The notes beneath the pieces were generated by a model, which was not told the origin of the DNA, ran no database searches, and saw only the letters and a list, made by a program, of their open reading frames with translations. From positions 124,001 through 188,000 of the IMG/VR virus record IMGVR_UViG_3300023257_000007: 64,000 nucleotides of DNA; one strand, written 5' to 3'. The stretch's first letter is position 1; the number at the start of each line of letters is the position of its first letter. Shown piece after piece: positions 197 to 63,216 of this stretch. The translations under genes and the position numbers were made by a program.

Positions 197-646
197 TTAA
201 TTGTATTTCGTTCTTCGATTTACTTTTTGAGTTATTTCAAAAAGTAAATCAAGAATATAATTGTCACATTCTTCATTTTTCGTTTCTTCTATTGGAACTG
301 GATTTTCGAAATTTGGATTTTTTTCCGCTCTTTTTTGATCATCTCTAAACCATTGATCTTCATTAATATAATATTCAAATCTCAAACCATTATCTAAAAT
401 AATAATTATCATATCATTTTTACTTTCACTAGAATCAGATGAATTACTAAGTCTAACATCTTTAATTTTACCACCAGGTAAAGTTTGTAAAACTTTCCCA
501 ATATATTCACTAAAATCTAGATCAGATCTATTATTTCTTTGAAATTCTGATTTCCAGTCATCAAATTCATGTCTATCATCTTGATTTAAAGAACCATAAA
601 TATCTTTAAGTTTATTAAAATTCTCGAATTTTTTTAAGTATTTCAT
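197..646 (-). CDS. Hypothetical protein with CTS-like leader (MKYLKKFENF), candidate internal head protein
   Basis: 149-aa ORF with the shared leader; AATATATATAA motif about 30 nt upstream. Confidence 0.7.
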   Translation of the reverse strand: MKYLKKFENFNKLKDIYGSLNQDDRHEFDDWKSEFQRNNRSDLDFSEYIGKVLQTLPGGKIKDVRLSNSSDSSESKNDMIIIILDNGLRFEYYINEDQWFRDDQKRAEKNPNFENPVPIEETKNEECDNYILDLLFEITQKVNRRTKYN

Positions 647-688
647 AATCGTTTTTTTTTTTTGTGGTTATTGATATTATATATATTA

Positions 689-961
689 TTAAGTTGAAAT
701 ATTTTTAGAGAAATTTTTTACAAATGGTATATAAATTTCTCTATAAGGTGACTCATTTTTAATTTGAGGGTGTTTATTAACTAGTTTTTTTAACCTATTT
801 AATTGTTCATCTATATCATCTATTTTAGTAATATCATCTAACATTTCTTCTAAATCTTTTATTTCTAATTTATAAAGACCAAGTTGATCGCTTACTGATT
901 TCCAATCTTTATCATTATTGAATGTATCATTCCATTCGTTGAATTTTCTTAAGTATTTCAT
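689..961 (-). CDS. Hypothetical protein with CTS-like leader (MKYLRKFNEW)
   Basis: 90-aa ORF; upstream region nearly identical to that of 197..646. Confidence 0.7.
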   Translation of the reverse strand: MKYLRKFNEWNDTFNNDKDWKSVSDQLGLYKLEIKDLEEMLDDITKIDDIDEQLNRLKKLVNKHPQIKNESPYREIYIPFVKNFSKNIST

Positions 962-1028
962 AATCTTTTTTTTGGGTTATTGATATTATATATCAACAAA
1001 AAAAAATGGTTTTTAACAAGATTGAAGA

Positions 1029-1433
1029 TTAAAATAATTCTTTTTCTAATTCTTTCATACATTGAATAACACCAAATTTGGTACCTTCCAATATAAAATC
1101 ATATAAAGAAAATATATTATTACTCTTTGGTGAATCATCAAACCAATTATTATCATTACAAATATCATCAACATCACTTTGATATTTCAAATAAAAATTA
1201 AAAATATCTCCATTCTCAACAAAATCTTGTAATTTACCTGGTTCTGGGTCATTAATGTAATCTCTGATAAAATTTTGAACATTAACCAATTCAGTTGTAT
1301 TATCAACTGAATTATCTAATAAATCTAATACTCCTCTCTTTAAAGAAATATATTGTTCGGTTAGTTTATCTTTAAGAGTATCTTCAAGATTCTCTTTTAT
1401 CATTTTTGAATATTCTTCTGTAAATTTTTTCAT
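1029..1433 (-). CDS. Hypothetical protein (weak leader MKKFTEEYSKMIKE)
   Basis: 134-aa ORF; TATATA lies 5 nt before the ATG. Confidence 0.7.
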   Translation of the reverse strand: MKKFTEEYSKMIKENLEDTLKDKLTEQYISLKRGVLDLLDNSVDNTTELVNVQNFIRDYINDPEPGKLQDFVENGDIFNFYLKYQSDVDDICNDNNWFDDSPKSNNIFSLYDFILEGTKFGVIQCMKELEKELF

Positions 1434-1456: not shown

Positions 1457-2401
1457 TTAAAAATCTGATGCATTTAATAATGTGTATTGATAAATACCAC
1501 CTTCCAATTTAGTTCGATATTTTTCACATAAAGACATAAATCTTTGAAAATCAGACCAATAATGTATTACTTGACAACCTGCAGACCATGATTTAACACC
1601 ACTCCCTGGTGATGATTTTTCGGTACCTACCTTAGTAGAATGTATATTAATACCTCCACCTTCACTACTATTAATATTATAATGAAAAGTTCCGTTTTTT
1701 GTAGGATCTCTATGAACTGGTAAATTATAAGTAGGGTTCAACGCTCTATATCTAGCAGAATTAGTTTGTTTATGATATCCAAGTTTATATGTAAATTGTC
1801 CCTCTTTTAAAATTGAACAACCTTTAGAATTTAATAATTTTTTAAGGTAATAAACTCCAGGTTTTGTAGTACATTCAAATTCTTCAACAATATCATCATA
1901 TACAACTAGCATAGTATCATTCCAATTATTCGGTTTATCAGCGTTTCTAACTCCTATTAATTGAAAAGGTTCAATCCATTTGTATTTTTTTAGTTTAAAA
2001 ATTCGTTTAAGTTGACTAACCGTAATATTTGAAGGTTTTGGTGTTGTGTTTGCTGGATTAGAACTACCATTATTTGAAGTTGATATATTTGTTTGACCAC
2101 CTTGACCTATTGATGAATCTAATTGTTTAGTAGGTGTATAAGTTCCCCATTCAGGGTTATTATATATAACATCTGATTCTCCAAAAGTATCTCCATCTAC
2201 ATACGGATCATAACTATCATCATCGGCATTAATATTACTAGAATATTGATTCATTTCAGAATAAGTAAACTCATTTGCGTCACCATATGAACCAGAATCT
2301 TCAAAATCATCAACACCACTATAAGGATCATATTCTTCTTTTATCACAGTCTCCTGTTTTTGTGTTATTGGCTTTGTTTCATCATATTTAGGTATAGCCA
2401 T
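1457..2401 (-). CDS. Putative YkuD/L,D-transpeptidase-fold cell-wall enzyme, tail-associated lysin candidate
   Basis: Acidic, low-complexity N-terminus; C-domain has INIH-x18-SAGCQV, a His...Cys pair like the YkuD HxnSxGC motif. Start overlaps the stop of the gp5-like gene (TAATG). Confidence 0.55.
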   Translation of the reverse strand: MAIPKYDETKPITQKQETVIKEEYDPYSGVDDFEDSGSYGDANEFTYSEMNQYSSNINADDDSYDPYVDGDTFGESDVIYNNPEWGTYTPTKQLDSSIGQGGQTNISTSNNGSSNPANTTPKPSNITVSQLKRIFKLKKYKWIEPFQLIGVRNADKPNNWNDTMLVVYDDIVEEFECTTKPGVYYLKKLLNSKGCSILKEGQFTYKLGYHKQTNSARYRALNPTYNLPVHRDPTKNGTFHYNINSSEGGGINIHSTKVGTEKSSPGSGVKSWSAGCQVIHYWSDFQRFMSLCEKYRTKLEGGIYQYTLLNASDF

Positions 2402-3564
2402 TATTTATATCTTATAAATTTTTTAGTTTTCTTATCAAAAATTGCAATTTTTCCATCTTCTGTTTCTCTATATATAATATCCTTTTTAGTACCAGAAGTT
2501 GGTATCGTTTTTATTATTTTAGGTTCTAAACCACTTGATTTTTTAACATTTAATTTCTTAAAATCTTTATATTGTGCGTATTCAGATTCATCTGTTTCAA
2601 TTGTCTCACCATCAACAACTTTAATATATGTTATATATTCAGTTCCGTCTTCGTTTTGACTAACAAAAGGAGCGTCATCTATAATAAATTTTGATGGTTG
2701 TGATTCTACTTCTTTATCTACAGCCTTTTCTCTTTCTTCATTAACTTTTTCTTTAAAATCTTTTGAAACATATTCAGATTTTAAAAGTTTTTTAGGTTTT
2801 GGTTCATTAAATTTATCAGTTAAATCAATTGTAAGATCATCATCATCTTTAATAACAGACGTTTCAGGTGATCTTTTCAATTTCTTAATTTTATTATCAT
2901 CATTCAAGAAAACATTATCAGAAACAAAAGTTTCTCTGATTACTTTATATTCCATTAACAACATATCTAACTCTGGTCTAATAATAGGGGCCGCTAAATT
3001 TCCTGTTAATGTTGTAGGAACCAATAATTTATTGATAAATTTATCCATCCACGCAAAAAAATTAGTTCCTAAAACAGCTTCTTGATCTGCAGTTTTATCA
3101 CCTAAATTTATTTTCTGTGAATTATCTTTTAATTCAATATTAATAGAATTATTATCTATTCTAATTTTATTATATTTATGATCTATTATAAATTCATCAC
3201 CATTTGTATATACCTGAGAAGTTTCATCAAATAATAAAGCCACAAAATTCAAATAATCATCTTCACTTAAACTCTTTAATTTTCTTTCAAGATTTATATT
3301 GTAATTCTCACTATAAATATAATGAGGATCATATATATCATCATTTAGAAAAATAACATTCACTATTTTACCAATAGCAGGAACCTCAAAAGATTTTCCA
3401 GCTAACCCCCTATATGGGGAAGAATATGGCAAATCTTCCATTGGTATAGTATCAAAAACACCTTGTACCCTAACTTTAAGTCTACCTTTTCTATTAGGAT
3501 CTTTATTATCTTCTACAATACCTACAAATATTTTATCTCTAATATCAACATTAATTTGTTGCAT
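2401..3564 (-). CDS. Baseplate hub/spike protein with gp5-like N-terminal OB domain
   Basis: GIVEDNKDPNRKGRLKVRVQGVF...FEVPAIGKIVNVIF is the Gp5/VgrG OB-fold signature; no lysozyme domain follows. Confidence 0.8.
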   Translation of the reverse strand: MQQINVDIRDKIFVGIVEDNKDPNRKGRLKVRVQGVFDTIPMEDLPYSSPYRGLAGKSFEVPAIGKIVNVIFLNDDIYDPHYIYSENYNINLERKLKSLSEDDYLNFVALLFDETSQVYTNGDEFIIDHKYNKIRIDNNSINIELKDNSQKINLGDKTADQEAVLGTNFFAWMDKFINKLLVPTTLTGNLAAPIIRPELDMLLMEYKVIRETFVSDNVFLNDDNKIKKLKRSPETSVIKDDDDLTIDLTDKFNEPKPKKLLKSEYVSKDFKEKVNEEREKAVDKEVESQPSKFIIDDAPFVSQNEDGTEYITYIKVVDGETIETDESEYAQYKDFKKLNVKKSSGLEPKIIKTIPTSGTKKDIIYRETEDGKIAIFDKKTKKFIRYK

Positions 3565-20706: not shown

Positions 20707-21228
20707 TTAAATTTCTTGACTACCTTGTTGTAACTGTTGACCTTGTTGTTGTAATTTCTGGCCTTGTTGTTGTAATTGCTGCCCTTGTGTTTGTAGATTT
20801 TGACCTTGTGCTTGTAAACCATCATCCTGTGCAGGAATATCCTGTGCAGTTTGTTGAGCTTGAGTTTCATCTGGAACATCTTGTAATGGTTGAACTTGTT
20901 GCGTTTGAGCTTGTTGCATTTGAGGTTGAACTTGTGCACCTTTTGCATAATTAGAACCCATTGCCATTGTAACAGGCAAATTCTCAATGTTCATATATGA
21001 TGAAGCGATATAGTTAACAATCATTTCAGCCATTTGTTCTGCACCATAAAGATCTTTAACATCTCTACCTGTCTCATCTTTAACTTTTTTAGTAAAAGCG
21101 TTAATTAATGATTTAGGTACATCAACGTTTGGTAATACTCTATAAACATCATCAATAGCAAATACAGTTTCTTGAACTTTATTTCCTTTTGAATTTTTAA
21201 AATCATTTAGATTTGTTAAATGTTTCAT
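20707..21228 (-). CDS. Hypothetical protein with CTS-like leader and Gln-rich heptad tail
   Basis: MKHLTNLNDF...; QGQNLQT/QGQQLQQ/QGQKLQQ/QGQQLQQ repeats (21-nt tandem, about 20737-20820); TTAATATATAA upstream. Confidence 0.7.
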   Translation of the reverse strand: MKHLTNLNDFKNSKGNKVQETVFAIDDVYRVLPNVDVPKSLINAFTKKVKDETGRDVKDLYGAEQMAEMIVNYIASSYMNIENLPVTMAMGSNYAKGAQVQPQMQQAQTQQVQPLQDVPDETQAQQTAQDIPAQDDGLQAQGQNLQTQGQQLQQQGQKLQQQGQQLQQGSQEI

Positions 21229-21281
21229 AATCGGATTTTTTATTTTTTATTATATATTAAACTTTATTTCTCATTTTTCTT

Positions 21282-22111: not shown

Positions 22112-24064
22112 TTATAAACTATTTTTTGACGAATCTATTGGTGGTGTACCATCTCTAGAAGTTTTATTACTTGGATTAAACACCGCACTCATAGAACTAT
22201 TTGGTATTGAATTATCACCAGTAATTTTATTTTCACCTAGTACCCAATAACCTTTATTCCAAATTCCATTATACCAATTACCAAGATAAAATTTTCCATT
22301 AATAAAAGTTCCATTATACCAATCACCAGACCAAAAATATCCATCATTAAATGTACCACCACTCCATCTACTAAAAAATATATTAGTTTTTGTTGATGAA
22401 CCATTTTTCCAATCAGCATATATTATATCGCTATTTTCTGCTATACCATTTTCCCAAATTGTATTTGTTGTTCCTGTCATGCCTAAAATCGGATCATAAA
22501 TATTCTCTGTTTCAGAATTGAAAAATTTACCATTTTTCCATGTACCATGACTCCATGTTGAATTATTAAACTCGCCTTGATACCAAGTACCAGAACTCCA
22601 TGTAGAATTTATCATTTTTCCATTATACCATGAACCATCTCTCCAACCACCATTATTAAAAGTTCCACCATACCACACACCGTCATACCACGTACCAGTT
22701 TCAAATATTCCATTATTCCAGATTCCATTATTCCATGTAGATCCACTACCTTTAAAAGCACCATTATTAAAAATTCCATCATACCATGTAACATAATTAA
22801 TTATATTACCATTATTAAAAGTTCCATCATACCAGTATATTTTATAATAATATATCAATAATTTTAAATCTCCACTCATATCACCACCATTAAATGTACC
22901 ACCTGACCACATACAATCTATATTATCTGCATTAAAATTGCCATTATTAAAAACACCATTATACCATTGTGAATCTACAAATGTTCCATCATTAAAAGTA
23001 CCACCAGTCCAATTTGATCTATAAAAATACCCATCATTAAAAATACCATTTAACCAAGTTTTTGAACTATTAAAATAACCAAATATCCCATTATTCCAAA
23101 TACCATCATACCAAACACTTGGTCCAAATTTTTGACTTTCTTCACTTAATAAAGAATAATCTTCACCTATATCATATTCCCATGTACCATAACTCCAAAT
23201 ACAATTATTTTCCACCGTACAATTTTTAAAATATCCACCAGTAATTATGTAATCACTTATCACACATTCTTCAAAATATCCACCACTTATAATATGATTA
23301 GAGCCATTAAAAACTCCATTATAATAAATACCAGATTCTATATTAGTTATATAAATATTTGAACTAATTGAATTTTCACAACCAATATAACTATAACCAT
23401 TATTATTATTATTTTTACTTATAGATAAAGATAATATATCATCTTCAGTATTAACTAATGTAGGATACATATAATCATATTTTAATTCAAATGTTGTACC
23501 AGTAGAATTACAAACAAAAAAGATACCTTGATTTACATTAACATCACCAATCAAATCACATTCTTTTATAATAGCTGCATCTATATAACCATCATTTATT
23601 GTGATATTTTCACATTTAACCAAACTAATATAATGATTTGTTAAATTAACATTTGAAGGTAAATCTTCATATTTTTTATTAATAATAATTAGATTTCTAT
23701 TACTATCTACATATATTACTTTATATCCATTATCTTTAACATAAGGAAAATTTAAATCATATCTTCTTTCATAAAATGTATCAATATTACCAGTTGCATC
23801 ATCAAAACTTGAAATATAAACTATATCTCCTATTTTAATATTAGAATCTAACATTGTATAAAACCCAAGATATTCATTATATCTTTCTGGTATGTTTACA
23901 ATCTTAACAGAATTTCTTGTTTCAGGATATTTTGCAAGTTCTCTTTTTCTAACAGGATCAATAGGATCTGATAAATTAACATTAATACCCAATTCTAATG
24001 ATAGACCCTTTATAATTCCATTTGAATTTAATGTGTCAACAGGTATGTTTGTTATTCTAGCCAT
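22112..24064 (-). CDS. Pentapeptide-periodic (W/F-x-x-G-x) repeat protein, probable beta-solenoid
   Basis: Long WYDGIWNNGIF/WTGGTFNDGTF run; likely start MARITNIP (24064), just downstream of palindromic TTTTATATATAAAA at 24082-24095. Confidence 0.7.
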   Translation of the reverse strand: MARITNIPVDTLNSNGIIKGLSLELGINVNLSDPIDPVRKRELAKYPETRNSVKIVNIPERYNEYLGFYTMLDSNIKIGDIVYISSFDDATGNIDTFYERRYDLNFPYVKDNGYKVIYVDSNRNLIIINKKYEDLPSNVNLTNHYISLVKCENITINDGYIDAAIIKECDLIGDVNVNQGIFFVCNSTGTTFELKYDYMYPTLVNTEDDILSLSISKNNNNNGYSYIGCENSISSNIYITNIESGIYYNGVFNGSNHIISGGYFEECVISDYIITGGYFKNCTVENNCIWSYGTWEYDIGEDYSLLSEESQKFGPSVWYDGIWNNGIFGYFNSSKTWLNGIFNDGYFYRSNWTGGTFNDGTFVDSQWYNGVFNNGNFNADNIDCMWSGGTFNGGDMSGDLKLLIYYYKIYWYDGTFNNGNIINYVTWYDGIFNNGAFKGSGSTWNNGIWNNGIFETGTWYDGVWYGGTFNNGGWRDGSWYNGKMINSTWSSGTWYQGEFNNSTWSHGTWKNGKFFNSETENIYDPILGMTGTTNTIWENGIAENSDIIYADWKNGSSTKTNIFFSRWSGGTFNDGYFWSGDWYNGTFINGKFYLGNWYNGIWNKGYWVLGENKITGDNSIPNSSMSAVFNPSNKTSRDGTPPIDSSKNSL

Positions 24065-29437: not shown

Positions 29438-30091
29438 TTATCTACTTAATAAACCTATTTTAGAATAAACATTTTTCCAATCATCCTCATTGTTTATTAT
29501 ATATTCAGGTTCTCTGGAATCTAAAATAGTTTCAGCATTTTCAATTGTTACATAATCAACGGCTTTTATTTTAATTCCATCATTAATTCTAACTCTATAA
29601 GTTTTAAATGTTTCACTCAAAATTTGTGCTATATATAAAGGAAAAGTACCATCATCAATATACATAACAGCAGAAAGTTTTGCATTTGGCATCTCAACGT
29701 ACAACTTATTCTCTGTATCTATCAAATGATATTTGGATAAGCTTTCTTTAATTCCGTTATGTTTAATAACATCACTATTCTTAACATAATAATAAGAATC
29801 TGTAGAAGTTTCTTTAAAAACTAATGATGCATCAATTTTTTTACAGAATTGATTTAACATTTTTCTTTGAAAATTGCCTTTATCTAATAAATTACTATTA
29901 ATTAATCCACTAAACTTATATTTATCTTCTAATATAACAACAATTTTTCTATTTGCATTATCATAATACAAACAATCTATATCCAACATATAATTAGATC
30001 TAGATAAACTTCTATGTCCTTCAGAAAAGACATTACTTTTACCCCATTTTCTTTTATAATCTTCAAATATGTTTTTAATTCTTTGTATCAT
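29438..30091 (-). CDS. Hypothetical protein
   Basis: 217-aa ORF overlapping the end of the CCA gene. Confidence 0.6.
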   Translation of the reverse strand: MIQRIKNIFEDYKRKWGKSNVFSEGHRSLSRSNYMLDIDCLYYDNANRKIVVILEDKYKFSGLINSNLLDKGNFQRKMLNQFCKKIDASLVFKETSTDSYYYVKNSDVIKHNGIKESLSKYHLIDTENKLYVEMPNAKLSAVMYIDDGTFPLYIAQILSETFKTYRVRINDGIKIKAVDYVTIENAETILDSREPEYIINNEDDWKNVYSKIGLLSR

Positions 30092-31382
30092 TACTCATAT
30101 ATTCATTTTTAAATCTTTCGTATTCTATTCTTCTCATTTCTTCACCTAAAGCCTTTCCATGAAATCCCTTTTGCATTAACTCTTGTGAATTTTTTAAAAA
30201 ACCATCACTACAATATTTAATGAAAGCTTCAGTTATATTTGAATATAATCCCTGAGACTTAGTATATAATCTTAATATATTATCATCAATACCAAATCTA
30301 GTCTTATTTTTAGCTAACTGATAAATATTTGTCATCCACATATCACCTGTAGATTCTTCTATTATCTTTTTCTCATAATTAAATAGAAAAATAATATAAT
30401 CAATCAAATTATTTTGCAACTTACAATCAATTAATTTGTTGGTTAAATTCGAATCATCTGAACTTGGAGTCATCAAAATAGGTAAAATTATCCTATTATC
30501 GAAAAGTGAAAAATTCACCCAAGGAACCTCTATTTTAATTCCAGGGAAAATCTCATCAAACATATCAAATTCATCAAGTAATCTTAAATATTTAATAAAC
30601 ATAGACATATCATTTGCATCTCTCGCATGACCTAACATTTTATTCCATTCACCATTTTTAGTGTCAAATATTCTTTCAAATGAAACATCATCTTTCTCAG
30701 ATATTCCATGTAATCTATGATCCATAGTTAATGCATTCTTTACATTTTCACTTATTTTACCATTAGTTCTTGCACAAAATCTAAACAATCTTAATATTCT
30801 CAATCTATCTTCATTAAACCTTTCATAAGGTTCACCAACAGTTTTAATAAGTCCTTTCTTTAAATCTTCAATACCACCAACATAATCAATGATTTTCTTA
30901 CTACCAAGATCATAAAACATTGCATTAATTGTTAAATCTCTTCTTAAAACATCATCTTGTATTGTAACATTTGAACCAATTTCTACTTTTTGATCATCAC
31001 CTTTAACATCTCTACCTTTAGCAATATCTTTTCTATAGGTTGCTAATTCATGACCTAATGGTTCTAAATCTGTATAAATTCTTAATACTCCAAAATTTTG
31101 TCCTTGCTCTTCTTCAGAAACATAACCACCATTCCAATCTTCTAATATCTCTTTAGATTCATCTGGCATTGCATCTGTAACTAAATCAAAATCTTTAGGT
31201 TTTTTTCCTTGTAAATAATCTCTAGGAGCGCCACCTACAACATATAATTCCTTACCATACTTTTTAAATCTTTCATATATTTCTACAATATCTTCGGGTA
31301 TGAACATATCTTTAGCTTTAACAGTTTTCTTTTGCATTTTATTTTCATTTAAAAATTCAGAATATTTATACAATTTATTCAT
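30075..31382 (-). CDS. cca: CCA-adding enzyme / tRNA nucleotidyltransferase (class II NTase) with CTS-like leader
   Basis: VVGGAPRD...DFDLVTD, ELATYR, RRDLTINAM, RFNEDRLRILR; N-terminus MNKLYKYSEFLNE. Confidence 0.85.
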   Translation of the reverse strand: MNKLYKYSEFLNENKMQKKTVKAKDMFIPEDIVEIYERFKKYGKELYVVGGAPRDYLQGKKPKDFDLVTDAMPDESKEILEDWNGGYVSEEEQGQNFGVLRIYTDLEPLGHELATYRKDIAKGRDVKGDDQKVEIGSNVTIQDDVLRRDLTINAMFYDLGSKKIIDYVGGIEDLKKGLIKTVGEPYERFNEDRLRILRLFRFCARTNGKISENVKNALTMDHRLHGISEKDDVSFERIFDTKNGEWNKMLGHARDANDMSMFIKYLRLLDEFDMFDEIFPGIKIEVPWVNFSLFDNRIILPILMTPSSDDSNLTNKLIDCKLQNNLIDYIIFLFNYEKKIIEESTGDMWMTNIYQLAKNKTRFGIDDNILRLYTKSQGLYSNITEAFIKYCSDGFLKNSQELMQKGFHGKALGEEMRRIEYERFKNEYMSNDTKN

Positions 31383-35036: not shown

Positions 35037-35333
35037 TTAATCATCAAATTGTGTGTACTCATTAGGTTGATTCAATAAACCTAAACTTTTGTAAATACAC
35101 ACTTTATTATTATCAATATAATATTTATCATAAGACGTAAAATTACATAAACTTATAAAAGATTCAAACCAAACCTCTTTTCCTGTAATAATATCATTTA
35201 ATTCAATTGTTATCATCTGATTTTCTTCAATTAAATTAATATCAATGTCAAGATCTTCAAAAAAATTATATAAATTTGATTTCAATGAAACATACTGTGT
35301 TTCATTTATAAATTGATTAAATTTTGTTTTCAT
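35037..35333 (-). CDS. Hypothetical protein with CTS-like leader (MKTKFNQFINE)
   Basis: 98 aa; TAATG coupling to the upstream gene. Confidence 0.65.
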   Translation of the reverse strand: MKTKFNQFINETQYVSLKSNLYNFFEDLDIDINLIEENQMITIELNDIITGKEVWFESFISLCNFTSYDKYYIDNNKVCIYKSLGLLNQPNEYTQFDD

Positions 35334-36025
35334 TATCTAAATGTTTTATAAAATTTACCTAAATTGTTCTTCTTATATATTAATTCTTTTTCTCTTCTAT
35401 CTAATTCTTCTAAAAATTCTTCATCATTAGAAACACCAAAATCTTTATAATGTTTCTCTCTAGAAGGCGCGGATGTCGTATAACTACCGTAAGTCGCAAT
35501 TGAGTCTGGTTTTGTAGTTTCAGGTAAATTTCTTTTTATAATTAACCCAGCCATTCTATTATCAATTTGATTAATTATTGGATCTTTTAAATGTTTAACA
35601 ATTTTCTTATTATTTTTAGTTTCTGGATAAAATGCAATAAATTCATCAAAAACGCCAATATCAAAAAGTCTACTTTTATTACTAGATTTAGTACTCGTTA
35701 TTCCTTCACTATATTCATAATCTGCAATTAAAGGAAATATATCATTAATATCTTTTGATTTTGAATTCATAAAATCATATAGAGGTTGTATGGCTTTTTT
35801 ATAAGCTTTTTGATTTTCTTCTTCTATACCAACTTTATTTCTTTCATACCAATTCGTACTCAAAGATCTCCATTTATCCTTGATCTTATCATATCCTTGA
35901 TAAGTACTATAATCTTTTTTAAGTTTTTGAAGACTTTTTAATACAACATCATCATCAACAATATTTTCAATTTCTTCCAATCTAATTTCAAGATCTTCAA
36001 GATCATTACTACAATATATTTTCAT
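35333..36025 (-). CDS. Hypothetical protein
   Basis: 230 aa; TAATG-coupled at both ends. Confidence 0.65.
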   Translation of the reverse strand: MKIYCSNDLEDLEIRLEEIENIVDDDVVLKSLQKLKKDYSTYQGYDKIKDKWRSLSTNWYERNKVGIEEENQKAYKKAIQPLYDFMNSKSKDINDIFPLIADYEYSEGITSTKSSNKSRLFDIGVFDEFIAFYPETKNNKKIVKHLKDPIINQIDNRMAGLIIKRNLPETTKPDSIATYGSYTTSAPSREKHYKDFGVSNDEEFLEELDRREKELIYKKNNLGKFYKTFR

Positions 36026-36447
36026 TAAAATAAACCTAATTTATTTGATTCAGTTGAATATTTGTATTGTGGATATTTATCCAAAAACTCATCTAATTCA
36101 AAATTGTTTTTTGTTTTAGTTTTTTGTAAAATTTCATTAAGACTATCTTCAACACTAACACCTAAAACTTCGAAATCTTTGTAGATACCAGTTGATAGTT
36201 TATTCTTATATTCAGAATTAGGATTATAAGATATATAACCTTTATTTTCAGAAGGTTTAAAATTCTTTTTATCATTAACAAAATCTAACCATTCTATATT
36301 AAATTTTTCATCACCATTATAAATATCACAAAAAATAGTGTAAATAATTTTCAATTTATCAGGTTTAATATTATATAATGTTAAATCGTTCCCTGTATAA
36401 TCAAGATTAATGTTTTCAAACATTTTATATAAAACTAAATATTTCAT
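36025..36447 (-). CDS. Hypothetical protein with leader-like N-terminus (MKYLVLYKMFEN)
   Basis: TATATA 5 nt before the ATG; ends ESNKLGLF. Confidence 0.65.
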   Translation of the reverse strand: MKYLVLYKMFENINLDYTGNDLTLYNIKPDKLKIIYTIFCDIYNGDEKFNIEWLDFVNDKKNFKPSENKGYISYNPNSEYKNKLSTGIYKDFEVLGVSVEDSLNEILQKTKTKNNFELDEFLDKYPQYKYSTESNKLGLF

Positions 36448-51289: not shown

Positions 51290-52045
51290 TTATAAATGCG
51301 GATCAAAATTAAAAAAAGTTATCTGTTCTTCTATTATTCTAAAAAAGAATTTTACTTCATTATTTTCTTTGTCAACATTTGTATATGGTGTAACTTTTTC
51401 AATCCAAGATTTATCTTGTGCAAAATGTATTAACGATTGGTTTAAAAGTGTTTCATCTTTGTGATCTTCTTTAAATAAATCTAAAGACATAGTTTTACTA
51501 ATTCTTAATTCATCTAATATTTTAACTTCAGATTTTACATTAGACCACCAATCCACAAAATCTTTTTTAACTTGATGTAATAAATTTAAATTCTTAAGAT
51601 TAGAATCTTTTAATCTCAACTTAATTGATTTAACACATTGGTGTCTTGGAAAATCATACCTTAAAAATCTATCATTAATTTTAAATTTCCCTATTTTATA
51701 GACTAGATTTTTTATACTATTATAGAATCCATATTCTAAAATTTTATTCTTTATACCTATAAAAAATGATAATTTATCGTCTTTAATACTTCTTAATGTC
51801 AAAAATGCAGTTTCTAAACTTTTCTTCATTTCTAATTCACCAAGTAATTCATTAATCTTCGTTATTCTATCAGTTGAAAAAAAATAGTAAAAACTACCAG
51901 TATTTAAATAGTTTTGGAAAGCAAAATCATTACCATGTTTATTAACCAAATCAAAAAAAATTCTAAATCCTTCTTTACCAGCTAACAATGGTTCTATTTG
52001 TATTTGTTCATTTATAAATTGTATATATGTATTAATAACTTTCAT
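51290..52045 (-). CDS. Hypothetical protein with CTS-like leader (MKVINTYIQFINE)
   Basis: 251 aa; ATGA coupling. Confidence 0.65.
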   Translation of the reverse strand: MKVINTYIQFINEQIQIEPLLAGKEGFRIFFDLVNKHGNDFAFQNYLNTGSFYYFFSTDRITKINELLGELEMKKSLETAFLTLRSIKDDKLSFFIGIKNKILEYGFYNSIKNLVYKIGKFKINDRFLRYDFPRHQCVKSIKLRLKDSNLKNLNLLHQVKKDFVDWWSNVKSEVKILDELRISKTMSLDLFKEDHKDETLLNQSLIHFAQDKSWIEKVTPYTNVDKENNEVKFFFRIIEEQITFFNFDPHL

Positions 52046-52377
52046 AATAATCCAAGTTTAATTGCTTCTATTTTTGTATTTAAATCATTAATATTTTTAA
52101 TATCCTCAGATTTACAAAATACATAGTTCGATTCACCACCCAAATTCTCTTCAATGCCAGTGTATGTTATTAAATTGTAATCTAGTTGATAAATTATACC
52201 TTTTATATAATTTTTAAAAGATTTTGGTTGTTGATCTGAATAACCATGCCCATCTTGCCAATATATCTTATTATTGAAAAACATTTCTTGCAATCTATAA
52301 AATTCTGATTTATCACACGATATAATTAAATATTTTTCATTCGTTGTTCTTTCATTATATGTTTTTAAATACTTCAT
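52042..52377 (-). CDS. Hypothetical protein with CTS-like leader (MKYLKTYNE)
   Basis: 111 aa; ends IEAIKLGLL. Confidence 0.65.
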   Translation of the reverse strand: MKYLKTYNERTTNEKYLIISCDKSEFYRLQEMFFNNKIYWQDGHGYSDQQPKSFKNYIKGIIYQLDYNLITYTGIEENLGGESNYVFCKSEDIKNINDLNTKIEAIKLGLL

Positions 52378-54630: not shown

Positions 54631-54996
54631 TTATTTATTGTATGATCCTGTGTTTGTCCAATCTCTTTTAGTTACCAATCCTGTTTGTTTTTTAAATTCT
54701 GTTTCTTGTGTTATTGATAAATTTTTATAACCATTTACAAGATTTGTAACTTTATCTAAACCTTTTTGATATGTTTCATCCGTTTCATCTTCAAATTTTT
54801 TATACCATTTTTTAGTAATAGCTGACCACATAGGTTCACTACCCACCTCCGGATGATTTTCCTTATAATCTTGTAAATATTTTGTGCATTCTTCATAATC
54901 ACCACAATTATCTATGTAATCCAACACATCTTGTAAATCATTATCATCTTGTAAATCATTATCTTGTAAATTTTCAAATTTTTTTAAGTGTTTCAT
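54631..54996 (-). CDS. Hypothetical protein with CTS-like leader (MKHLKKFENL)
   Basis: True start probably 54996; upstream AAAAAAAACGATT is shared with the 646 gene; LQD(D)ND mini-repeats. Confidence 0.65.
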   Translation of the reverse strand: MKHLKKFENLQDNDLQDDNDLQDVLDYIDNCGDYEECTKYLQDYKENHPEVGSEPMWSAITKKWYKKFEDETDETYQKGLDKVTNLVNGYKNLSITQETEFKKQTGLVTKRDWTNTGSYNK

Positions 54997-55030
54997 AATC
55001 GTTTTTTTTTTGTTGTCATTTGACATATAT

Positions 55031-55651
55031 TTAAAATTTTTGGATAAACCAAAAATTATCTCTTCCCCAAGTGGTCTTTACAATTTTCCCTTTAGCTTGT
55101 AAATCAGTTAAAACATTATTAACATCAGCTTCAGAAAAACCAACATGACCAGCAATAGTATAAGAACTCATCTTAACACCTTTATCTTTCATAACATGTA
55201 AAACATCATTACCTATTTCATTAATATCTTTAGAAATACCTTTAGTTTTTCCTAAAGTATTTAAACCTTTTGGTCCTTCACTTTGTAAATCATTAATAGT
55301 CTTAGAAATACCTAAAACTGGTTTTGCAATAGCTGGTCCTTTAGCTTTTGTATCATTCAATTGATCTAAACTATAACCTGGTTGATTACCTTCAAATTTT
55401 TGAATAAATTCAAATTTATCGTGTCCTAATATATTATTCTTAACGATATGACCACCGTCTTCTAGACCTTTTAGTATATTGTTAACTTGAGCTACAGTAA
55501 CAGCACCACCCAAAGCGGTTTTAATTGACATAGCAGTTGCAGGAACGCCTTTATCTTTCATTGCTGATATAACTTGATCTTTTAAATCACCTATTTCTTT
55601 TGCTACTTTATTAGCTTCTGTGATAAACTCTGTTAATGTTTTAATTTTCAT
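55031..55651 (-). CDS. Tandem winged-helix (Z-alpha-like) protein with CTS-like leader
   Basis: Leader MKIKTLTEFITE|A; two similar domains each containing MKDKGV...VNN(I/V)L..L...G.IVK...F.FIQKF. Confidence 0.6.
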   Translation of the reverse strand: MKIKTLTEFITEANKVAKEIGDLKDQVISAMKDKGVPATAMSIKTALGGAVTVAQVNNILKGLEDGGHIVKNNILGHDKFEFIQKFEGNQPGYSLDQLNDTKAKGPAIAKPVLGISKTINDLQSEGPKGLNTLGKTKGISKDINEIGNDVLHVMKDKGVKMSSYTIAGHVGFSEADVNNVLTDLQAKGKIVKTTWGRDNFWFIQKF

Positions 55652-55696
55652 AATAACAATTATTATTTTTTCTTTTACTTATATATAAAAGTTAAA

Positions 55697-55755
55697 AATT
55701 CATTTTTTTAATTCAATACTATATATAAAATTCGATTACCTAAAATTTTTAAACT
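55697..55755. repeat. 59-bp exact direct repeat, copy 1, containing a late-type promoter
   Basis: aattcatttttttaattcaatactatatataaaattcgattacctaaaatttttaaact, identical to 56531..56589. Confidence 0.95.
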
Positions 55756-55756
55756 A

Positions 55757-56530
55757 TCATAATTTTATATTTGGAAATAGGTTTTTAACATTATCATAAT
55801 AAAGATTTCTAATATCATCTATAGATATATTAAATTCTTCTAATAAATTAGTTGGAGAATGTTTAGTTTTACCTGTCAGAACATCTTCAAAAAAATTTAA
55901 TTTTTCGTCTAATAAAGTTTTAAAATCTGATTTTTGTCTTTTTGCCATTTTATTTATACCTCTTAAGTATGCTAAAATTTCATCTGGTGTGATGATTTTA
56001 TTTAATAATCCATTTTTTTCTTTAATCATTATGTTATATAAATGTTTATTATTATAAGTAATATTATATCTTTTAGATAATTTATCATTATAATCTGATT
56101 TAACCATGTCGATTATTTCATCTGTAAAGTATTTTTGGAAATGTGACATTTCATGATCAACTAATTCAGATATTTTATAAGATAATTCCTCATATATTTT
56201 TTTAATATTGAGTGGATTTAATTTAATTTCTTCAATAGGAATACTAAATGTTATTACACTTACAAATATCATAAAATTTGTAGTTTTTGGTAAAATTTGA
56301 CCACCAACTTTAACTGAATAATTATCACTTTTTTTAAAATTGATATCAATATCAAAATAAAATCTAATATCATCAAATTTTTTTTCCTCTTTAATTTTTA
56401 TACTCTTTGAATCATTAATATTTTCAACATTCTCAATTATATCAACACATTTATTAAAAAAATATTTTTGTAATGATTTTCTAATCTCTCTCTTTAAATT
56501 AAAATATTCGTAATATTTAATATACTTCAT
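55757..56530 (-). CDS. Putative zincin metalloprotease (HExxH) with CTS-like leader
   Basis: MKYIKYYEYF leader; ELVDHEMSHFQ and a downstream helix DEILAY. Confidence 0.55.
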   Translation of the reverse strand: MKYIKYYEYFNLKREIRKSLQKYFFNKCVDIIENVENINDSKSIKIKEEKKFDDIRFYFDIDINFKKSDNYSVKVGGQILPKTTNFMIFVSVITFSIPIEEIKLNPLNIKKIYEELSYKISELVDHEMSHFQKYFTDEIIDMVKSDYNDKLSKRYNITYNNKHLYNIMIKEKNGLLNKIITPDEILAYLRGINKMAKRQKSDFKTLLDEKLNFFEDVLTGKTKHSPTNLLEEFNISIDDIRNLYYDNVKNLFPNIKL

Positions 56531-56589
56531 AATTCATTTTTTTAATTCAATACTATATATAAAATTCGATTACCTAAAATTTTTAAACT
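56531..56589. repeat. 59-bp exact direct repeat, copy 2
   Basis: Abuts the ATG of 55757..56530. Confidence 0.95.
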
Positions 56590-62931: not shown

Positions 62932-63216
62932 TTATCTTTTAACATCTCTAATAACTTTATCCATTCCTTTTTTCATATCTTCTATTAAAGATAATATAGT
63001 TTTATATTGTGGATCTTTTTTATGATATTTATCTAATTCTTGATATAATCTTTGTAATTCTTCTTCAAAATCTGGTCGTTTATTTTGTTTGCCAGTTTTT
63101 ATTCCTTTAGTATAAACAGTTCCTTCCTCATCTACAAACCTATTTCTCCAATTCCAACCTATAGGCCCAATTTTATTTTCATTAACATAATCATCAAAAT
63201 TACAAATATGTTTCAT
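62932..63216 (-). CDS. Hypothetical protein with CTS-like leader (MKHICNFDDYVNE)
   Basis: 94-aa lone - strand gene within a + strand block. Confidence 0.65.
   Translation of the reverse strand: MKHICNFDDYVNENKIGPIGWNWRNRFVDEEGTVYTKGIKTGKQNKRPDFEEELQRLYQELDKYHKKDPQYKTILSLIEDMKKGMDKVIRDVKR

What the first reader, a model, noticed from the sequence alone, without database searches (positions are those of the whole stretch)
623..993. Promoter + UTR + leader is copied as a DNA cassette onto different cargo genes
Seen: the 5' ends of adjacent genes 646 and 961 share near-identical DNA (...AATATATA(TA)ATATCAATAACC-c/a-AAAAAAAA(C)GATT-ATGAAATACTTAA(A/G)AAAATT...). The same AAAAAAAACGATT-ATGAAA(C/T)ACTTAAAAAAATT(C/T)GA(A/G)AAT block recurs 54 kb away at about 54970-55012, and CGATT-ATGAAACATTTAA recurs at 21228. 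After about 10 codons the sequences diverge completely. Inference: recombination at a short promoter/leader module lets new ORFs become late-expressed and capsid-targeted, loosely analogous to promoter-mediated ORF shuffling described in T4-like phages.
Basis: partly seen in the sequence, partly recalled or inferred. Interest (0 to 1): 0.7.

Follow-up and report, generated by a model that had tools for sequence, protein, structure and literature searches.

The report
Shared 5′ module on small phage genes
Four small genes of a huge, AT-rich T4-like phage share a block of up to about 60 bases (the phage's ordinary promoter box, an A-rich leader and the first 8-10 codons); those codons encode an N-terminal peptide tag carried by about 7% of this phage's genes and by many related uncultured phages, so the block is mostly a conserved family feature, with one clear case of recent DNA copying onto an unrelated gene.

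Summary
The repeat is real. All copies lie on the minus strand: copy A at 626-686, B at 941-994, C at 54976-55032 and a weak copy D at 21216-21261. A pattern scan found 4 hits against 0.04 expected.

The "cassette" has three layers.
1. The promoter part is the genome-wide box TTTTAATATATA[AG]. It precedes about 120 of 493 ORFs, including the capsid protein, the prohead protease and a topoisomerase II gene.
2. The leader is an unstructured A-rich stretch that fits Shine-Dalgarno-independent initiation.
3. The codons encode MK[YH]L[KR]KF[EN]. This belongs to an N-terminal peptide motif on 31-37 ORFs here and in about 30 other low-GC viral contigs. Synonymous codons vary freely, so the peptide is what is selected.

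Genes B and C are true, distant paralogs (profile E 3e-14). Their relatives in other metagenomes all carry the same N-terminus, so that part is ordinary paralogy. Gene A shares a sharp-edged 59-61 nt block with its neighbour B, including non-coding spacer and rare codons, but has an undetectably related body. That points to recent local copying or gene conversion.

"Late" expression and "capsid-targeted" are untested. The peptide does resemble the T4 capsid-targeting sequence in a phage with T4-type head genes. Interest is moderate.

The parts
626..686 (-). Module copy A. It consists of a promoter-like box ATATATATAA (677-686), spacer TATCAATAACC (666-676), A12 tract (652-663), CGATT (647-651), and the ATG plus 6 further codons, ATGAAATACTTAAAAAAATTC (626-646).
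   Evidence: A variant strain has A11 instead of A12 at position 652.
197..646 (-). Gene A, 149 aa, starting MKYLKKFENF. The body is an ORFan and is not detectably related to B, C or any other ORF of the genome.
   Evidence: AF2 and ESM models have low confidence.
941..994 (-). Module copy B. It consists of the box GATATATAA (986-994), the identical spacer TATCAATAACC (975-985), an A8 tract with its flanking C and G (965-974), GATT (962-965), and ATGAAATACTTAAGAAAATTC (941-961).
689..961 (-). Gene B, 90 aa, starting MKYLRKFNEW. It belongs to a small helical-protein family with the signature ..L..[IV].xHP[EQ]I..ES.[WY]..I...[WF].K.F.
   Evidence: A profile built without B, with N-termini masked, hits B at E 3.3e-14.
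54976..55032 (-). Module copy C. It consists of a degenerate box AAATATATG (55024-55032, overlapping the stop codon of the upstream gene), spacer TCAAATGACAAC (55012-55023), A10 tract (55002-55011), CGATT (54997-55001), and ATGAAACACTTAAAAAAATTT (54976-54996).
   Evidence: Contigs holding the C locus cross-map onto copy A in read laying.
54631..54996 (-). Gene C, 121 aa, starting MKHLKKFENL, from the same family as B. The ORF list also offers an upstream in-frame ATG at 55026, giving a 131-aa form. That ATG lies inside the box, spacer and A-tract, so it is probably not the real start.
   Evidence: In the AF2 model residues 21-70 form helices at pLDDT 83-87, while residues 1-18 score below 50.
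21216..21261 (-). Weak copy D. It consists of the consensus box TTTAATATATAA (21250-21261), an A-rich leader, CGATT, and ATGAAACATTTAA.
   Evidence: (73% identity over 44 nt)
20707..21228 (-). Gene D, 173 aa, starting MKHLTNLNDF. The body has no paralog in the genome.

Best explanation
The block is the conserved 5' expression-and-tag module of a fast-evolving set of small phage proteins. It is not a free-standing mobile cassette. It has three stacked functional layers.

1. Promoter box. This is the phage's generic single-box promoter-like element, TTTTAATATATA[AG].
2. Leader. This is a short, unstructured, A-rich stretch with A at -3, suited to Shine-Dalgarno-independent initiation.
3. N-terminal peptide. 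Eight to ten codons encode MK[YH]L[KR]KF[EN]. This is a flexible peptide tag selected at the protein level, found on many unrelated bodies in this phage and in related low-GC phages.

Origin of the copies. B and C carry the module by descent, because they are diverged paralogs of a family in which this N-terminus is ancestral. The near-identity of A and B includes an otherwise unconstrained spacer and two rare codons. It reflects a recent local event between neighbours: a partial tandem duplication, or gene conversion limited to about 60 nt. That event put the family's module in front of a body (A) that is unrelated or unrecognisably diverged.

Function of the peptide (inferred, about 30%). 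My leading candidate is a T4-CTS-like prohead-targeting or propeptide signal.

Shown: the anatomy, the statistics, the paralogy of B and C, protein-level selection on the peptide, and the generic nature of the box.
Inferred: promoter activity, the mode of translation, the copying event, and the peptide's function.
For: Promoter box is generic.
- ATATATAA occurs 89 times in the 60 nt upstream of ORFs against 9.5 expected, a 9.4-fold enrichment.
- 122 of 493 ORFs have the box within 70 nt upstream, mostly 5-35 nt from the ATG. They include the gp23-like capsid protein, the gp21-like protease ORF and topoisomerase II.

Leader.
- Shine-Dalgarno-like motifs are not enriched: 45 of 493 against 33 in a control window.
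- A makes up 55-62% of bases at -10 to -20 and 63% at -3. This matches the Kozak-like rule described for Bacteroidetes (PMC6847099).
- The leader RNAs fold at only -0.9 to -2.9 kcal/mol, with z-scores of 0 or above.

Peptide.
- The core motif occurs 30 times at N-termini and 10 times internally, a 64-fold enrichment per position. With the following E it is 28 against 2, about 250-fold.
- Synonymous codons vary about as in the whole genome: TTA/CTT/TTG, AAA/AAG, TAT/TAC, ACA/ACT.
- A degenerate DNA pattern for the motif hits 45 loci, about 30 of them other viral contigs, all 20-30% GC. Almost every hit sits at an ORF start.
- The flanks of those foreign loci hold 95 motif ORFs.
- Bodies behind the motif include LRR, ankyrin and methyltransferase domains.

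Paralogy.
- An exhaustive profile search finds relatives that all begin MK[HY]L[KR]KF or a close variant.
- Gene B hits a profile built without it, N-termini masked, at E 3.3e-14.
- In the AF2 model of C the helical core is confident, while residues 1-18 (the motif plus an acidic linker) are not. This suggests a tethered linear motif.

Recent copying between A and B.
- A and B share 19/19 bases of box plus spacer, although spacers of other genes are arbitrary.
- The 11-mer spacer occurs only 3 times in the genome.
- A and B share the rare codons TAC (9% of Tyr codons) and TTC (15% of Phe codons).
- hhalign aligns A to the family only over residues 1-12.

The same pattern elsewhere.
- g477/g478 share a 47-nt block at 96% identity on an LRR body and an unrelated body.
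- g112/g113 share their first 32-33 nt at 100%.
- A foreign contig, L065, holds two adjacent family genes with identical UTR and 12 identical codons, but bodies only about 55% identical.
- Genome-wide, 21 short repeats span a start codon in both copies, against 0.9 expected.
Against: - No transcript data exist. All runs found are DNA, so promoter activity and timing are unproven.
- No closely related genome covers the A/B locus. The two assemblies that do are identical, so the copying event cannot be dated or polarised.
- A might be a paralog diverged beyond detection.
- Copy C keeps partial similarity in the spacer. A gene-specific operator constraint on the spacer, rather than recency, therefore cannot be excluded.
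- Population contigs show no cassette-to-cassette deletion or swap.
- Against a CTS-like function: at least 31 genes, or 50 or more counting the second class, is many for packaged proteins. Most are small and acidic (median pI 5.8). The MK[YH]LK.[YF].E class lacks the (I/L)xE processing site of T4. The protease match is below Pfam's cut-off. No virion proteome exists.
Confidence: 0.55

Rival explanations
1. The block is a mobile regulatory cassette, loosely like the PeSLs of T4-type phages. It recombines onto new ORFs and so recruits them to late expression and capsid packaging.
For: - A and B have unrelated bodies behind a sharp-edged shared block.
- A second such pair exists, g477/g478.
- A 59-nt promoter-region duplication at 100% identity lies upstream of two adjacent genes at 55697-55755 and 56531-56589.
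- Start-spanning repeats are 23-fold over expectation.
- UvsX-type recombinase is encoded in the window.
Against: - Only three good copies exist. Two of them (B, C) sit on paralogs that carry the N-terminus by descent.
- There is no stem-loop and no sigma-70 -35/-10 promoter.
- The exact UTR block occurs in no other viral or metagenome contig.
- No recombinant joints appear in population contigs.
- Most motif genes have unrelated upstream DNA or lie inside operons.
- The box is not specific to a timing class.
Confidence: 0.2
2. Pure paralogy with purifying selection and no recent DNA copying. A, B, C and D are all old duplicates of one gene. Every base of the 5' module is functionally constrained while the bodies diverge under diversifying selection.
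For: - B, C, g112 and g113 are demonstrable paralogs with very diverged bodies.
- The foreign pair in L065 shows an intermediate stage, with identical 5' ends and bodies about 55% identical.
- Copy C keeps partial spacer similarity.
- In SPN3US, gp53 and gp54 are paralogs with identical N-termini but 34% overall identity (PMC5694885).
Against: - A and D have no detectable body homology, even by profile comparison.
- Spacers downstream of the box are otherwise arbitrary.
- Synonymous sites of the motif are free genome-wide, yet A and B share two rare codons.
- g112 and g113 share C's body type but have a different N-terminal variant and different upstream DNA. Module and body histories therefore disagree.
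Confidence: 0.15
3. The shared codons are an mRNA-level translation-initiation feature (an AU-rich, unstructured start region) and not a protein tag.
For: - The genome uses SD-independent, A-rich leaders.
- The region is unstructured.
- AAA as the second codon is very common: K at position 2 in 172 of 493 ORFs.
Against: - The motif includes non-AU codons: ACA, GAA and CAT.
- Leu at position 4 is encoded by TTA, CTT or TTG, and Ile appears as a conservative replacement. K/R and Y/F/H replacements are also conservative.
- The motif is 64- to 250-fold enriched over internal positions of the same AT-rich proteins.
- The same peptide is kept across about 30 other viral contigs.
Confidence: 0.1
4. 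The similarity arises by chance in low-complexity AT-rich DNA.
For: - The genome is 25% GC.
- Copy D is only 73% identical over 44 nt.
- Short matches of about 37 nt at 84% identity to the A-tract region occur in unrelated metagenome contigs.
Against: - 4 hits against 0.04 expected in dinucleotide-preserving shuffles.
- All copies are anchored on start codons, on the same strand as their genes.
- A and C are 93% identical over 44 nt.
Confidence: 0.02

Closest known systems
T4 capsid-targeting sequence (CTS, MKTYQEFIAE) on the internal proteins IPI/II/III and Alt
   Same: - Both are an N-terminal peptide of about 10 residues placed on otherwise unrelated or fast-diverging proteins.
- In T4, residues 4 and 7 carry the targeting (PMC9026906). 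Here positions 4 ([LI]) and 7 ([YF]) are the most conserved hydrophobic positions.
- This genome encodes a gp23-type capsid protein and a weak gp21-type protease.
- A second class of 21 N-termini here fits [FY]..[FY][ILV].E, the full T4 pattern including the I-x-E processing site.
- T4 Alt has propeptides at both ends (PMC9026906). Many proteins here also have a conserved C-terminal motif.
   Different: - Packaging and cleavage are untested here.
- The MK[YH]LK.[YF].E class, which includes A, B and C, has no (I/L)xE site.
- The number of tagged genes (31-37, or 50 or more with the second class) far exceeds T4's handful.
- Most tagged proteins are small and acidic, whereas T4 internal proteins are basic.
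- There is no sequence homology beyond the pattern.
PeSLs (promoter-early stem-loops) of T4-type phages (PMC2839356, PMC4122927)
   Same: - Both are short repeated regulatory blocks at gene boundaries of small ORFan-rich regions, ending at the start codon.
- Both are proposed substrates for homologous recombination and modular shuffling.
   Different: - PeSLs are defined by a sigma-70 -35/-10 promoter plus a stable stem-loop terminator, and they end at the SD and ATG.
- The block here has a single AT box, no stem-loop, no SD, and extends 8-10 codons into the gene.
- No mini-circles or swaps were observed.
SPN3US gp53/gp54 and other giant-phage head-protein paralogs with conserved N-terminal propeptides (PMC5694885)
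   Same: Both are adjacent paralogs whose N-termini stay identical while the rest diverges strongly. The authors interpret this as a CTS-like assembly signal.
   Different: - The SPN3US propeptides are about 125 residues long and are shown by mass spectrometry to be cleaved.
- Here the conserved part is about 10 residues, and no protein data exist.
Kozak-like, SD-independent translation-initiation regions of Bacteroidetes (PMC6847099)
   Same: Both have A at -3, A-rich unstructured leaders and no SD enrichment.
   Different: - The host is unknown.
- The A8-A12 homopolymer is an extreme form and is length-polymorphic between strains.

Membership tests
PeSL regulatory cassette | Sigma-70-type promoter with -35 and -10 hexamers | tested here: not met
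   The consensus scan of 1-1600 finds no site at the blocks, and its total count equals the shuffle expectation: 14 against 14.3. Only a single AT box is present.
PeSL regulatory cassette | Stable stem-loop (terminator or attenuator) within the motif | tested here: not met
   The three leaders fold at -0.9 to -2.9 kcal/mol with z-scores of 0.04 to 1.03. No terminator-like site lies at the blocks.
PeSL regulatory cassette | Repeated upstream of ORFans in plastic regions, with evidence of recombination between copies | tested here: inconclusive
   The copies do precede ORFans, and start-spanning repeats are enriched. However, no recombinant joints or alternative cargo were found.
T4-type capsid-targeting sequence | N-terminal peptide of about 10 residues with key hydrophobic or aromatic residues at positions 4 and 7 | tested here: met
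   Position 4 is L or I in 31 of 31 motif genes and position 7 is Y or F in 31 of 31. The motif is strictly N-terminal.
T4-type capsid-targeting sequence | Prohead-protease processing site (I/L)-x-E at residues 8-10 | tested here: not met
   A, B and C read FEN, FNE and FEN at residues 7-9. There is no I/L-x-E. A separate class of 21 other N-termini does carry it.
T4-type capsid-targeting sequence | T4-type head machinery (gp23 capsid protein, gp21 protease) in the same genome | tested here: met
   PF07068 (Gp23) matches at E 4.7e-25, above the cut-off. PF03420 (Peptidase_S77) matches at E 6e-6 to 1e-4, below the cut-off.
T4-type capsid-targeting sequence | Tagged proteins are found inside heads and the tag is removed | not testable with these tools
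   This needs virion mass spectrometry. The phage is uncultured.
Ordinary paralogous gene family | Homology extends through the gene bodies | tested here: inconclusive
   Met for B, C, g112 and g113. Not met for A, where hhalign aligns only residues 1-12, or for D.

The most novel reading that the evidence does not exclude
The N-terminal tag MK[YH]LK[TK][YF].E, together with a C-terminal tail K[LM]GL[LM]/K[YF]N[IL], may mark a large repertoire of small cargo proteins in huge low-GC T4-like phages. The bodies include LRR, ankyrin, methyltransferase and many ORFan domains. Under this reading the proteins are loaded into the prohead, or otherwise sorted, by their termini and delivered to the host. 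The conserved gene-boundary DNA that encodes these termini (the end of one gene, a short junction, and the start of the next) would also serve as the homology on which whole genes are shuffled, duplicated and replaced. This would be an integron-like or T4 ip-locus-like system, scaled up to 10% or more of the genome.
Probability: 0.2. Interest if true: 0.8.

Novelty: new variant of a known kind. Interest (0 to 1): 0.45.

Why it matters
If the N-terminal peptide is a sorting tag, it gives a sequence handle for predicting which proteins a whole clade of uncultured huge phages treats as one functional class, possibly packaged effectors. Neither the peptide nor the C-terminal tail turned up in the literature held here. 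The locus also offers a concrete example of how phage ORFans can acquire a ready-made promoter, leader and tag by a copying event of about 60 nt. Practically, the module helps correct start-codon calls, for example in gene C. It also documents the promoter box and the SD-independent initiation context of this phage group.

Tried and rejected
- Homolog search for A found only itself among 5.8 billion proteins. The same search for C found nothing.
- The search for related loci with A and with the baseplate hub protein found only the same phage.
- 'relatives' are not available for a virus record.
- Exact-pattern scans for the UTR block in IMG/VR and JGI metagenomes found only the two assemblies of this phage. 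They are identical at these loci.
- Sequencing runs: no RNA runs were found.
- Logan contigs of 6 salt-lake or marine DNA runs show a 99%-like strain with A11 instead of A12. They show no block-to-block deletions. Short 37-nt matches at 84% in unrelated contigs were judged uninformative.
- Pfam and PHROGs on A-D and on 58 motif proteins show no common family.
- AF2 of A alone gives pLDDT 44, and the ESM Atlas gives no usable lead.
- Foldseek of the C model against BFVD gives no hit at E 0.001 or better.
- Rfam and tRNA scans of the region are negative.
- I considered that the C-terminal G codon doubles as an SD for the next gene, and rejected it as the main cause. SD motifs are not enriched and the G codon varies among GGA, GGT, GGG and GGC, although GGA is over-used.
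Full report
**Context**

The window is bases 209,476-273,475 of a single 344,634-bp contig with 25.3% GC. A second assembly of the same virus is 348,222 bp and is identical at the loci studied. It comes from salt-lake metagenomes.

It is a tailed phage with T4-type parts:
- a gp23-family capsid protein (PF07068, E 4.7e-25);
- a weak gp21-type prohead-protease domain inside an 811-aa ORF (PF03420, below cut-off);
- a gp5-type baseplate hub OB domain at window 2401-3564(-);
- UvsX, DnaB, ribonucleotide reductase and helicases.

CheckV completeness is 48%. The only nucleotide-level relative in GenBank phages is a 735-kb uncultured phage.

I called 493 ORFs with a simple longest-ORF procedure. Counts below depend on that call set.

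**1. The observation**

The genes lie on the minus strand.
- A: 197-646, 149 aa.
- B: 689-961, 90 aa.
- C: 54631-54996, 121 aa.
- D: 20707-21228, 173 aa.

A 24-nt degenerate pattern across the start codon hits exactly these four places, against 0.04 expected by chance. The repeat finder returns them as one family. The 44-nt copies are 77% (B), 73% (D) and 93% (C) identical to copy A.

A and B share, in order:
- ATATATAA plus TATCAATAACC, 19/19 identical;
- an A-tract, A12 in A and A8 in B;
- (C)GATT;
- ATG and six to seven further codons.

Both edges are sharp. C shares the A-tract, CGATT and the codons, plus a degenerate box and spacer. D shares little beyond generic features and CGATTATGAAACATTTAA.

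**2. The 'promoter' is generic**

ATATATAA and AATATATA are the most enriched 8-mers in the 60 nt upstream of ORFs, with 89-90 occurrences against about 10 expected. The consensus is TTTTAATATATA[AG].

It lies within 70 nt upstream of 122 of 493 ORFs, mostly 5-35 nt from the ATG. These include the capsid gene, the protease ORF, several ORFs above 1000 aa, and the topoisomerase II gene at window 56646.

Sharing this box is therefore not evidence for a cassette, and it does not indicate late timing. No sigma-70-type -35/-10 promoter stands out.

**3. The leader**

Shine-Dalgarno-like motifs are not enriched upstream of ORFs (45 against 33 in a control window). In contrast, A reaches 55-62% at -10 to -20 and 63% at -3. 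This is the SD-independent, Kozak-like pattern described for Bacteroidetes (PMC6847099).

The A8-A12 tract at roughly -5 to -17, with A at -3, is an extreme form of that pattern.

The leaders do not fold: -0.9 to -2.9 kcal/mol, with z-scores of 0 or above. No Rfam family matches. A nearly identical strain in another run has A11 instead of A12.

The string A(8 or more)-C?-GATT-ATG occurs only at A, B and C in the genome. It occurs in no other contig of IMG/VR or the JGI metagenomes.

**4. The 'leader peptide' is a widespread N-terminal motif selected at the protein level**

Depending on the stringency of the pattern, 31-37 ORFs begin M[KR][HYF][LI][KR].[FY], usually followed by [NE]E. Most have unrelated upstream DNA, and several lie directly behind the stop codon of the preceding gene.

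The core motif is 64-fold more frequent per position at N-termini than inside proteins. With the following E it is 250-fold.

Synonymous codons vary about as in the genome as a whole, and replacements are conservative:
- Leu4 is TTA 22, CTT 3, TTG 2, with Ile in 4 cases;
- K/R, Y/H/F and Y/F replacements occur at the other positions.

A degenerate DNA pattern for MK[HY]LKT[YF].[ED] finds 45 loci in IMG/VR. About 30 are contigs other than this phage, all with 20-30% GC, ranging from 4 kb to 640 kb. Almost every hit is the first ATG of an ORF.

The flanks of those foreign loci hold 95 motif ORFs, often in tandem arrays. Bodies include ankyrin repeats and a methyltransferase domain. In this genome one is an LRR protein. 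None of six peptide strings occurs in the literature library.

**5. Are the bodies related?**

- Pairwise BLASTP gives only the first 8-11 residues for A against B and A against C. For B against C it gives 27% identity over 45 residues.
- With the N-terminus masked, C hits g112 (genome 81616, E 6e-8). A, B and D hit nothing.
- A profile of C, g112 and g113 hits B at E 1.7e-4.
- An exhaustive search of 1.84 billion representatives with the four-sequence profile finds a small family in other metagenomes. Every member starts with the same kind of N-terminus: MKHLRKFKQFES, MKHLRKFNEDL, MKYLKKFNEDY, MKKLKKFNENW, MENKLKKFEEFE, MKHLKNFENN, MKTIKNYNEF.
- A profile of that family built without B, with N-termini masked, hits B at E 3.3e-14.

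B and C are therefore paralogs, and the tag is ancestral in their family.

A is different. hhalign aligns it to the family only over residues 1-12. It is an ORFan among 5.8 billion proteins. Its models are unreliable.

In the AF2 model of C made with the family alignment, residues 21-70 form a confident helical core (pLDDT 83-87). Residues 1-18, the tag plus an acidic linker, score below 50. The linker varies greatly in length between relatives. The tag therefore behaves as a tethered linear motif and not as part of the fold.

**6. Evidence for DNA-level copying**

Spacers between the box and the ATG are otherwise arbitrary, yet A and B share theirs exactly. The 11-mer occurs three times in the genome. 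The third occurrence is an unrelated gene end, and about 0.5 occurrences are expected by chance.

A and B also share two rare codons, TAC (9% of Tyr codons) and TTC (15% of Phe codons).

Module similarity groups (A,B),C. Body similarity groups (C,g112,g113),B, with A outside. g112 and g113 carry another N-terminal variant and other upstream DNA.

The same pattern recurs.
- g477 (an LRR protein) and g478 share 47 nt at 96% identity: the stop codon of the preceding gene, a 22-nt junction and 7 codons. Their middles are unrelated.
- g112 and g113 share their first 32-33 nt exactly.
- A foreign 552-nt contig carries two adjacent family genes with identical UTR and 12 identical codons, but bodies only about 55% identical.
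- A promoter-region repeat, 59 nt of it at 100% identity, lies before two adjacent genes at window 55697-55755 and 56531-56589.

Genome-wide, 21 of 174 short repeats span a start codon in both copies, against 0.9 expected.

I read this as frequent local duplication or gene conversion confined to gene boundaries, on top of protein-level conservation of the termini.

I found no direct recombinants. No alternative cargo sits behind the same UTR block in other contigs, and no block-to-block joints appear in population contigs.

**7. What the tag may do**

The T4 capsid-targeting sequence is MKTYQEFIAE (PMC8442874). Its residues 4 and 7 carry targeting, and residues 8 and 10 carry processing by gp21 (PMC9026906). 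It sits on diverse, fast-evolving internal proteins (PMC3012670, PMC9026906).

Here positions 4 and 7 are the invariant hydrophobic positions. The phage has T4-type head genes. A second class of 21 N-termini, such as MKKYGEFINE, MKTKFNQFINE and MKIKTLTEFITE (this last one is the gene next to C), fits the full T4 pattern [FY]..[FY][ILV].E.

Against this reading:
- the class containing A, B and C lacks an (I/L)xE site;
- the number of tagged genes is large;
- the proteins are mostly small and acidic;
- nothing has been tested.

I rate a CTS-like function at about 30%. An mRNA-level role for the codons is unlikely given the codon evidence.

**8. Comparison and verdict**

The block is not a PeSL. 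It lacks both defining parts, the sigma-70 promoter and the stem-loop (PMC2839356).

It works most like the T4 ip/CTS arrangement, and like the identical N-termini of the SPN3US paralogs gp53 and gp54 (PMC5694885). Membership in the CTS class is unproven.

- DNA copying of a promoter-leader-tag block is real for A and B;
- the wider sharing is a protein-level family feature;
- B and C are ordinary paralogs;
- 'late' and 'capsid-targeted' are unsupported.

I classify it as a new variant of a known kind, of moderate interest. The genome-wide terminal motifs are the more interesting lead.

Noticed in passing
Whole genome, clustered at genome 299-343 kb and 0-2 kb. In the window: 36025-36447(-) and 52042-52377(-).: About 55 of 493 ORFs (11%) end in a C-terminal tail E..K[LM]GL[LM]*. 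The stop codon often overlaps the next ATG (TAATG or ATGA). 16 of these ORFs also carry the N-terminal motif. Other low-GC viral contigs show K[YF]N[IL]* at the same place. The Gly codon varies but GGA is over-used: 59% against 27% genome-wide. The function is unknown.
   Followed up: partly
window 55697-55755 and 56531-56589 (the 76-nt family D5 spans 55680-55755 and 56514-56589): A promoter-containing intergenic block, 59 nt at 100% identity, is duplicated upstream of two adjacent minus-strand genes: 55031-55651 (winged-helix-like, DUF7343) and 55757-56530 (an N-motif protein). The first gene thus has two boxes in tandem.
   Followed up: partly
L060:9312-9358 and L060:9717-9763 (genome 337311-337357 and 337716-337762): This is a second 'UTR plus leader' block, 47 nt at 96% identity. 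It is shared by an LRR protein (g477) and an unrelated 127-aa protein (g478). Their similarity is confined to the first 8 and last 16 residues.
   Followed up: yes
L062:717-974 and L062:983-1381 (genome 81616-82280): The adjacent paralogs g112 and g113, which have the same body family as genes B and C, share their first 32-33 nt exactly (MKILKFKQFES). They then diverge, and their upstream DNA is unrelated.
   Followed up: yes
window 54997-55026: The ORF of gene C has an upstream in-frame ATG at 55026, giving a 131-aa form beginning MSNDNKKKTIMKHL.... That ATG lies inside the box, spacer and A-tract. Comparison with A and B indicates that the real start is at 54996.
   Followed up: yes
Whole genome. 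In the window for example 35037-35333(-), 30075-31382(-), 51290-52045(-), 55031-55651(-), 62932-63216(-).: A second class of 21 N-termini fits [FY]..[FY][ILV].E, for example MKTKFNQFINE and MKIKTLTEFITE. This is the pattern of the T4 capsid-targeting sequence including its I-x-E processing site. It is 9- to 13-fold enriched at N-termini.
   Followed up: partly
window 652-663: The A12 tract of copy A is A11 in a contig of a roughly 99%-identical strain from another salt-lake run. That contig also has a few changes just upstream of copy B at 996-1017.
   Followed up: no
Whole genome: The distance from the promoter-like box to the ATG clusters near 5 nt and near 20 nt. The 5-nt class, for example window 1029-1433(-), would give leaderless or nearly leaderless mRNAs if the box is a -10 element. 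SD motifs are not enriched.
   Followed up: partly
window 22235-23011, inside ORF 22112-24064(-): Eleven copies of a 42- to 45-nt repeat encode a glycine- and aromatic-rich 15-residue repeat in a 650-aa protein. It has no Pfam or PHROG match.
   Followed up: no
L061:1788-3440(-) and 11 other genome loci: A twelve-member paralog family of proteins mostly 550-600 aa long. The one member scanned (L061:1788-3440) matches DUF7487 at E 3e-38. One member lies next to the capsid gene.
   Followed up: no
Genome 1-146, 20805-21166, 97305-97727 and 336939-337241: DNA repeats of about 60 and 120-180 nt at 80-90% identity encode the LRR units of N-motif proteins (g133, g477 and fragments). They also reach the contig's left end, which may matter for assembly and for completeness, estimated at 48% by CheckV.
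   Followed up: no
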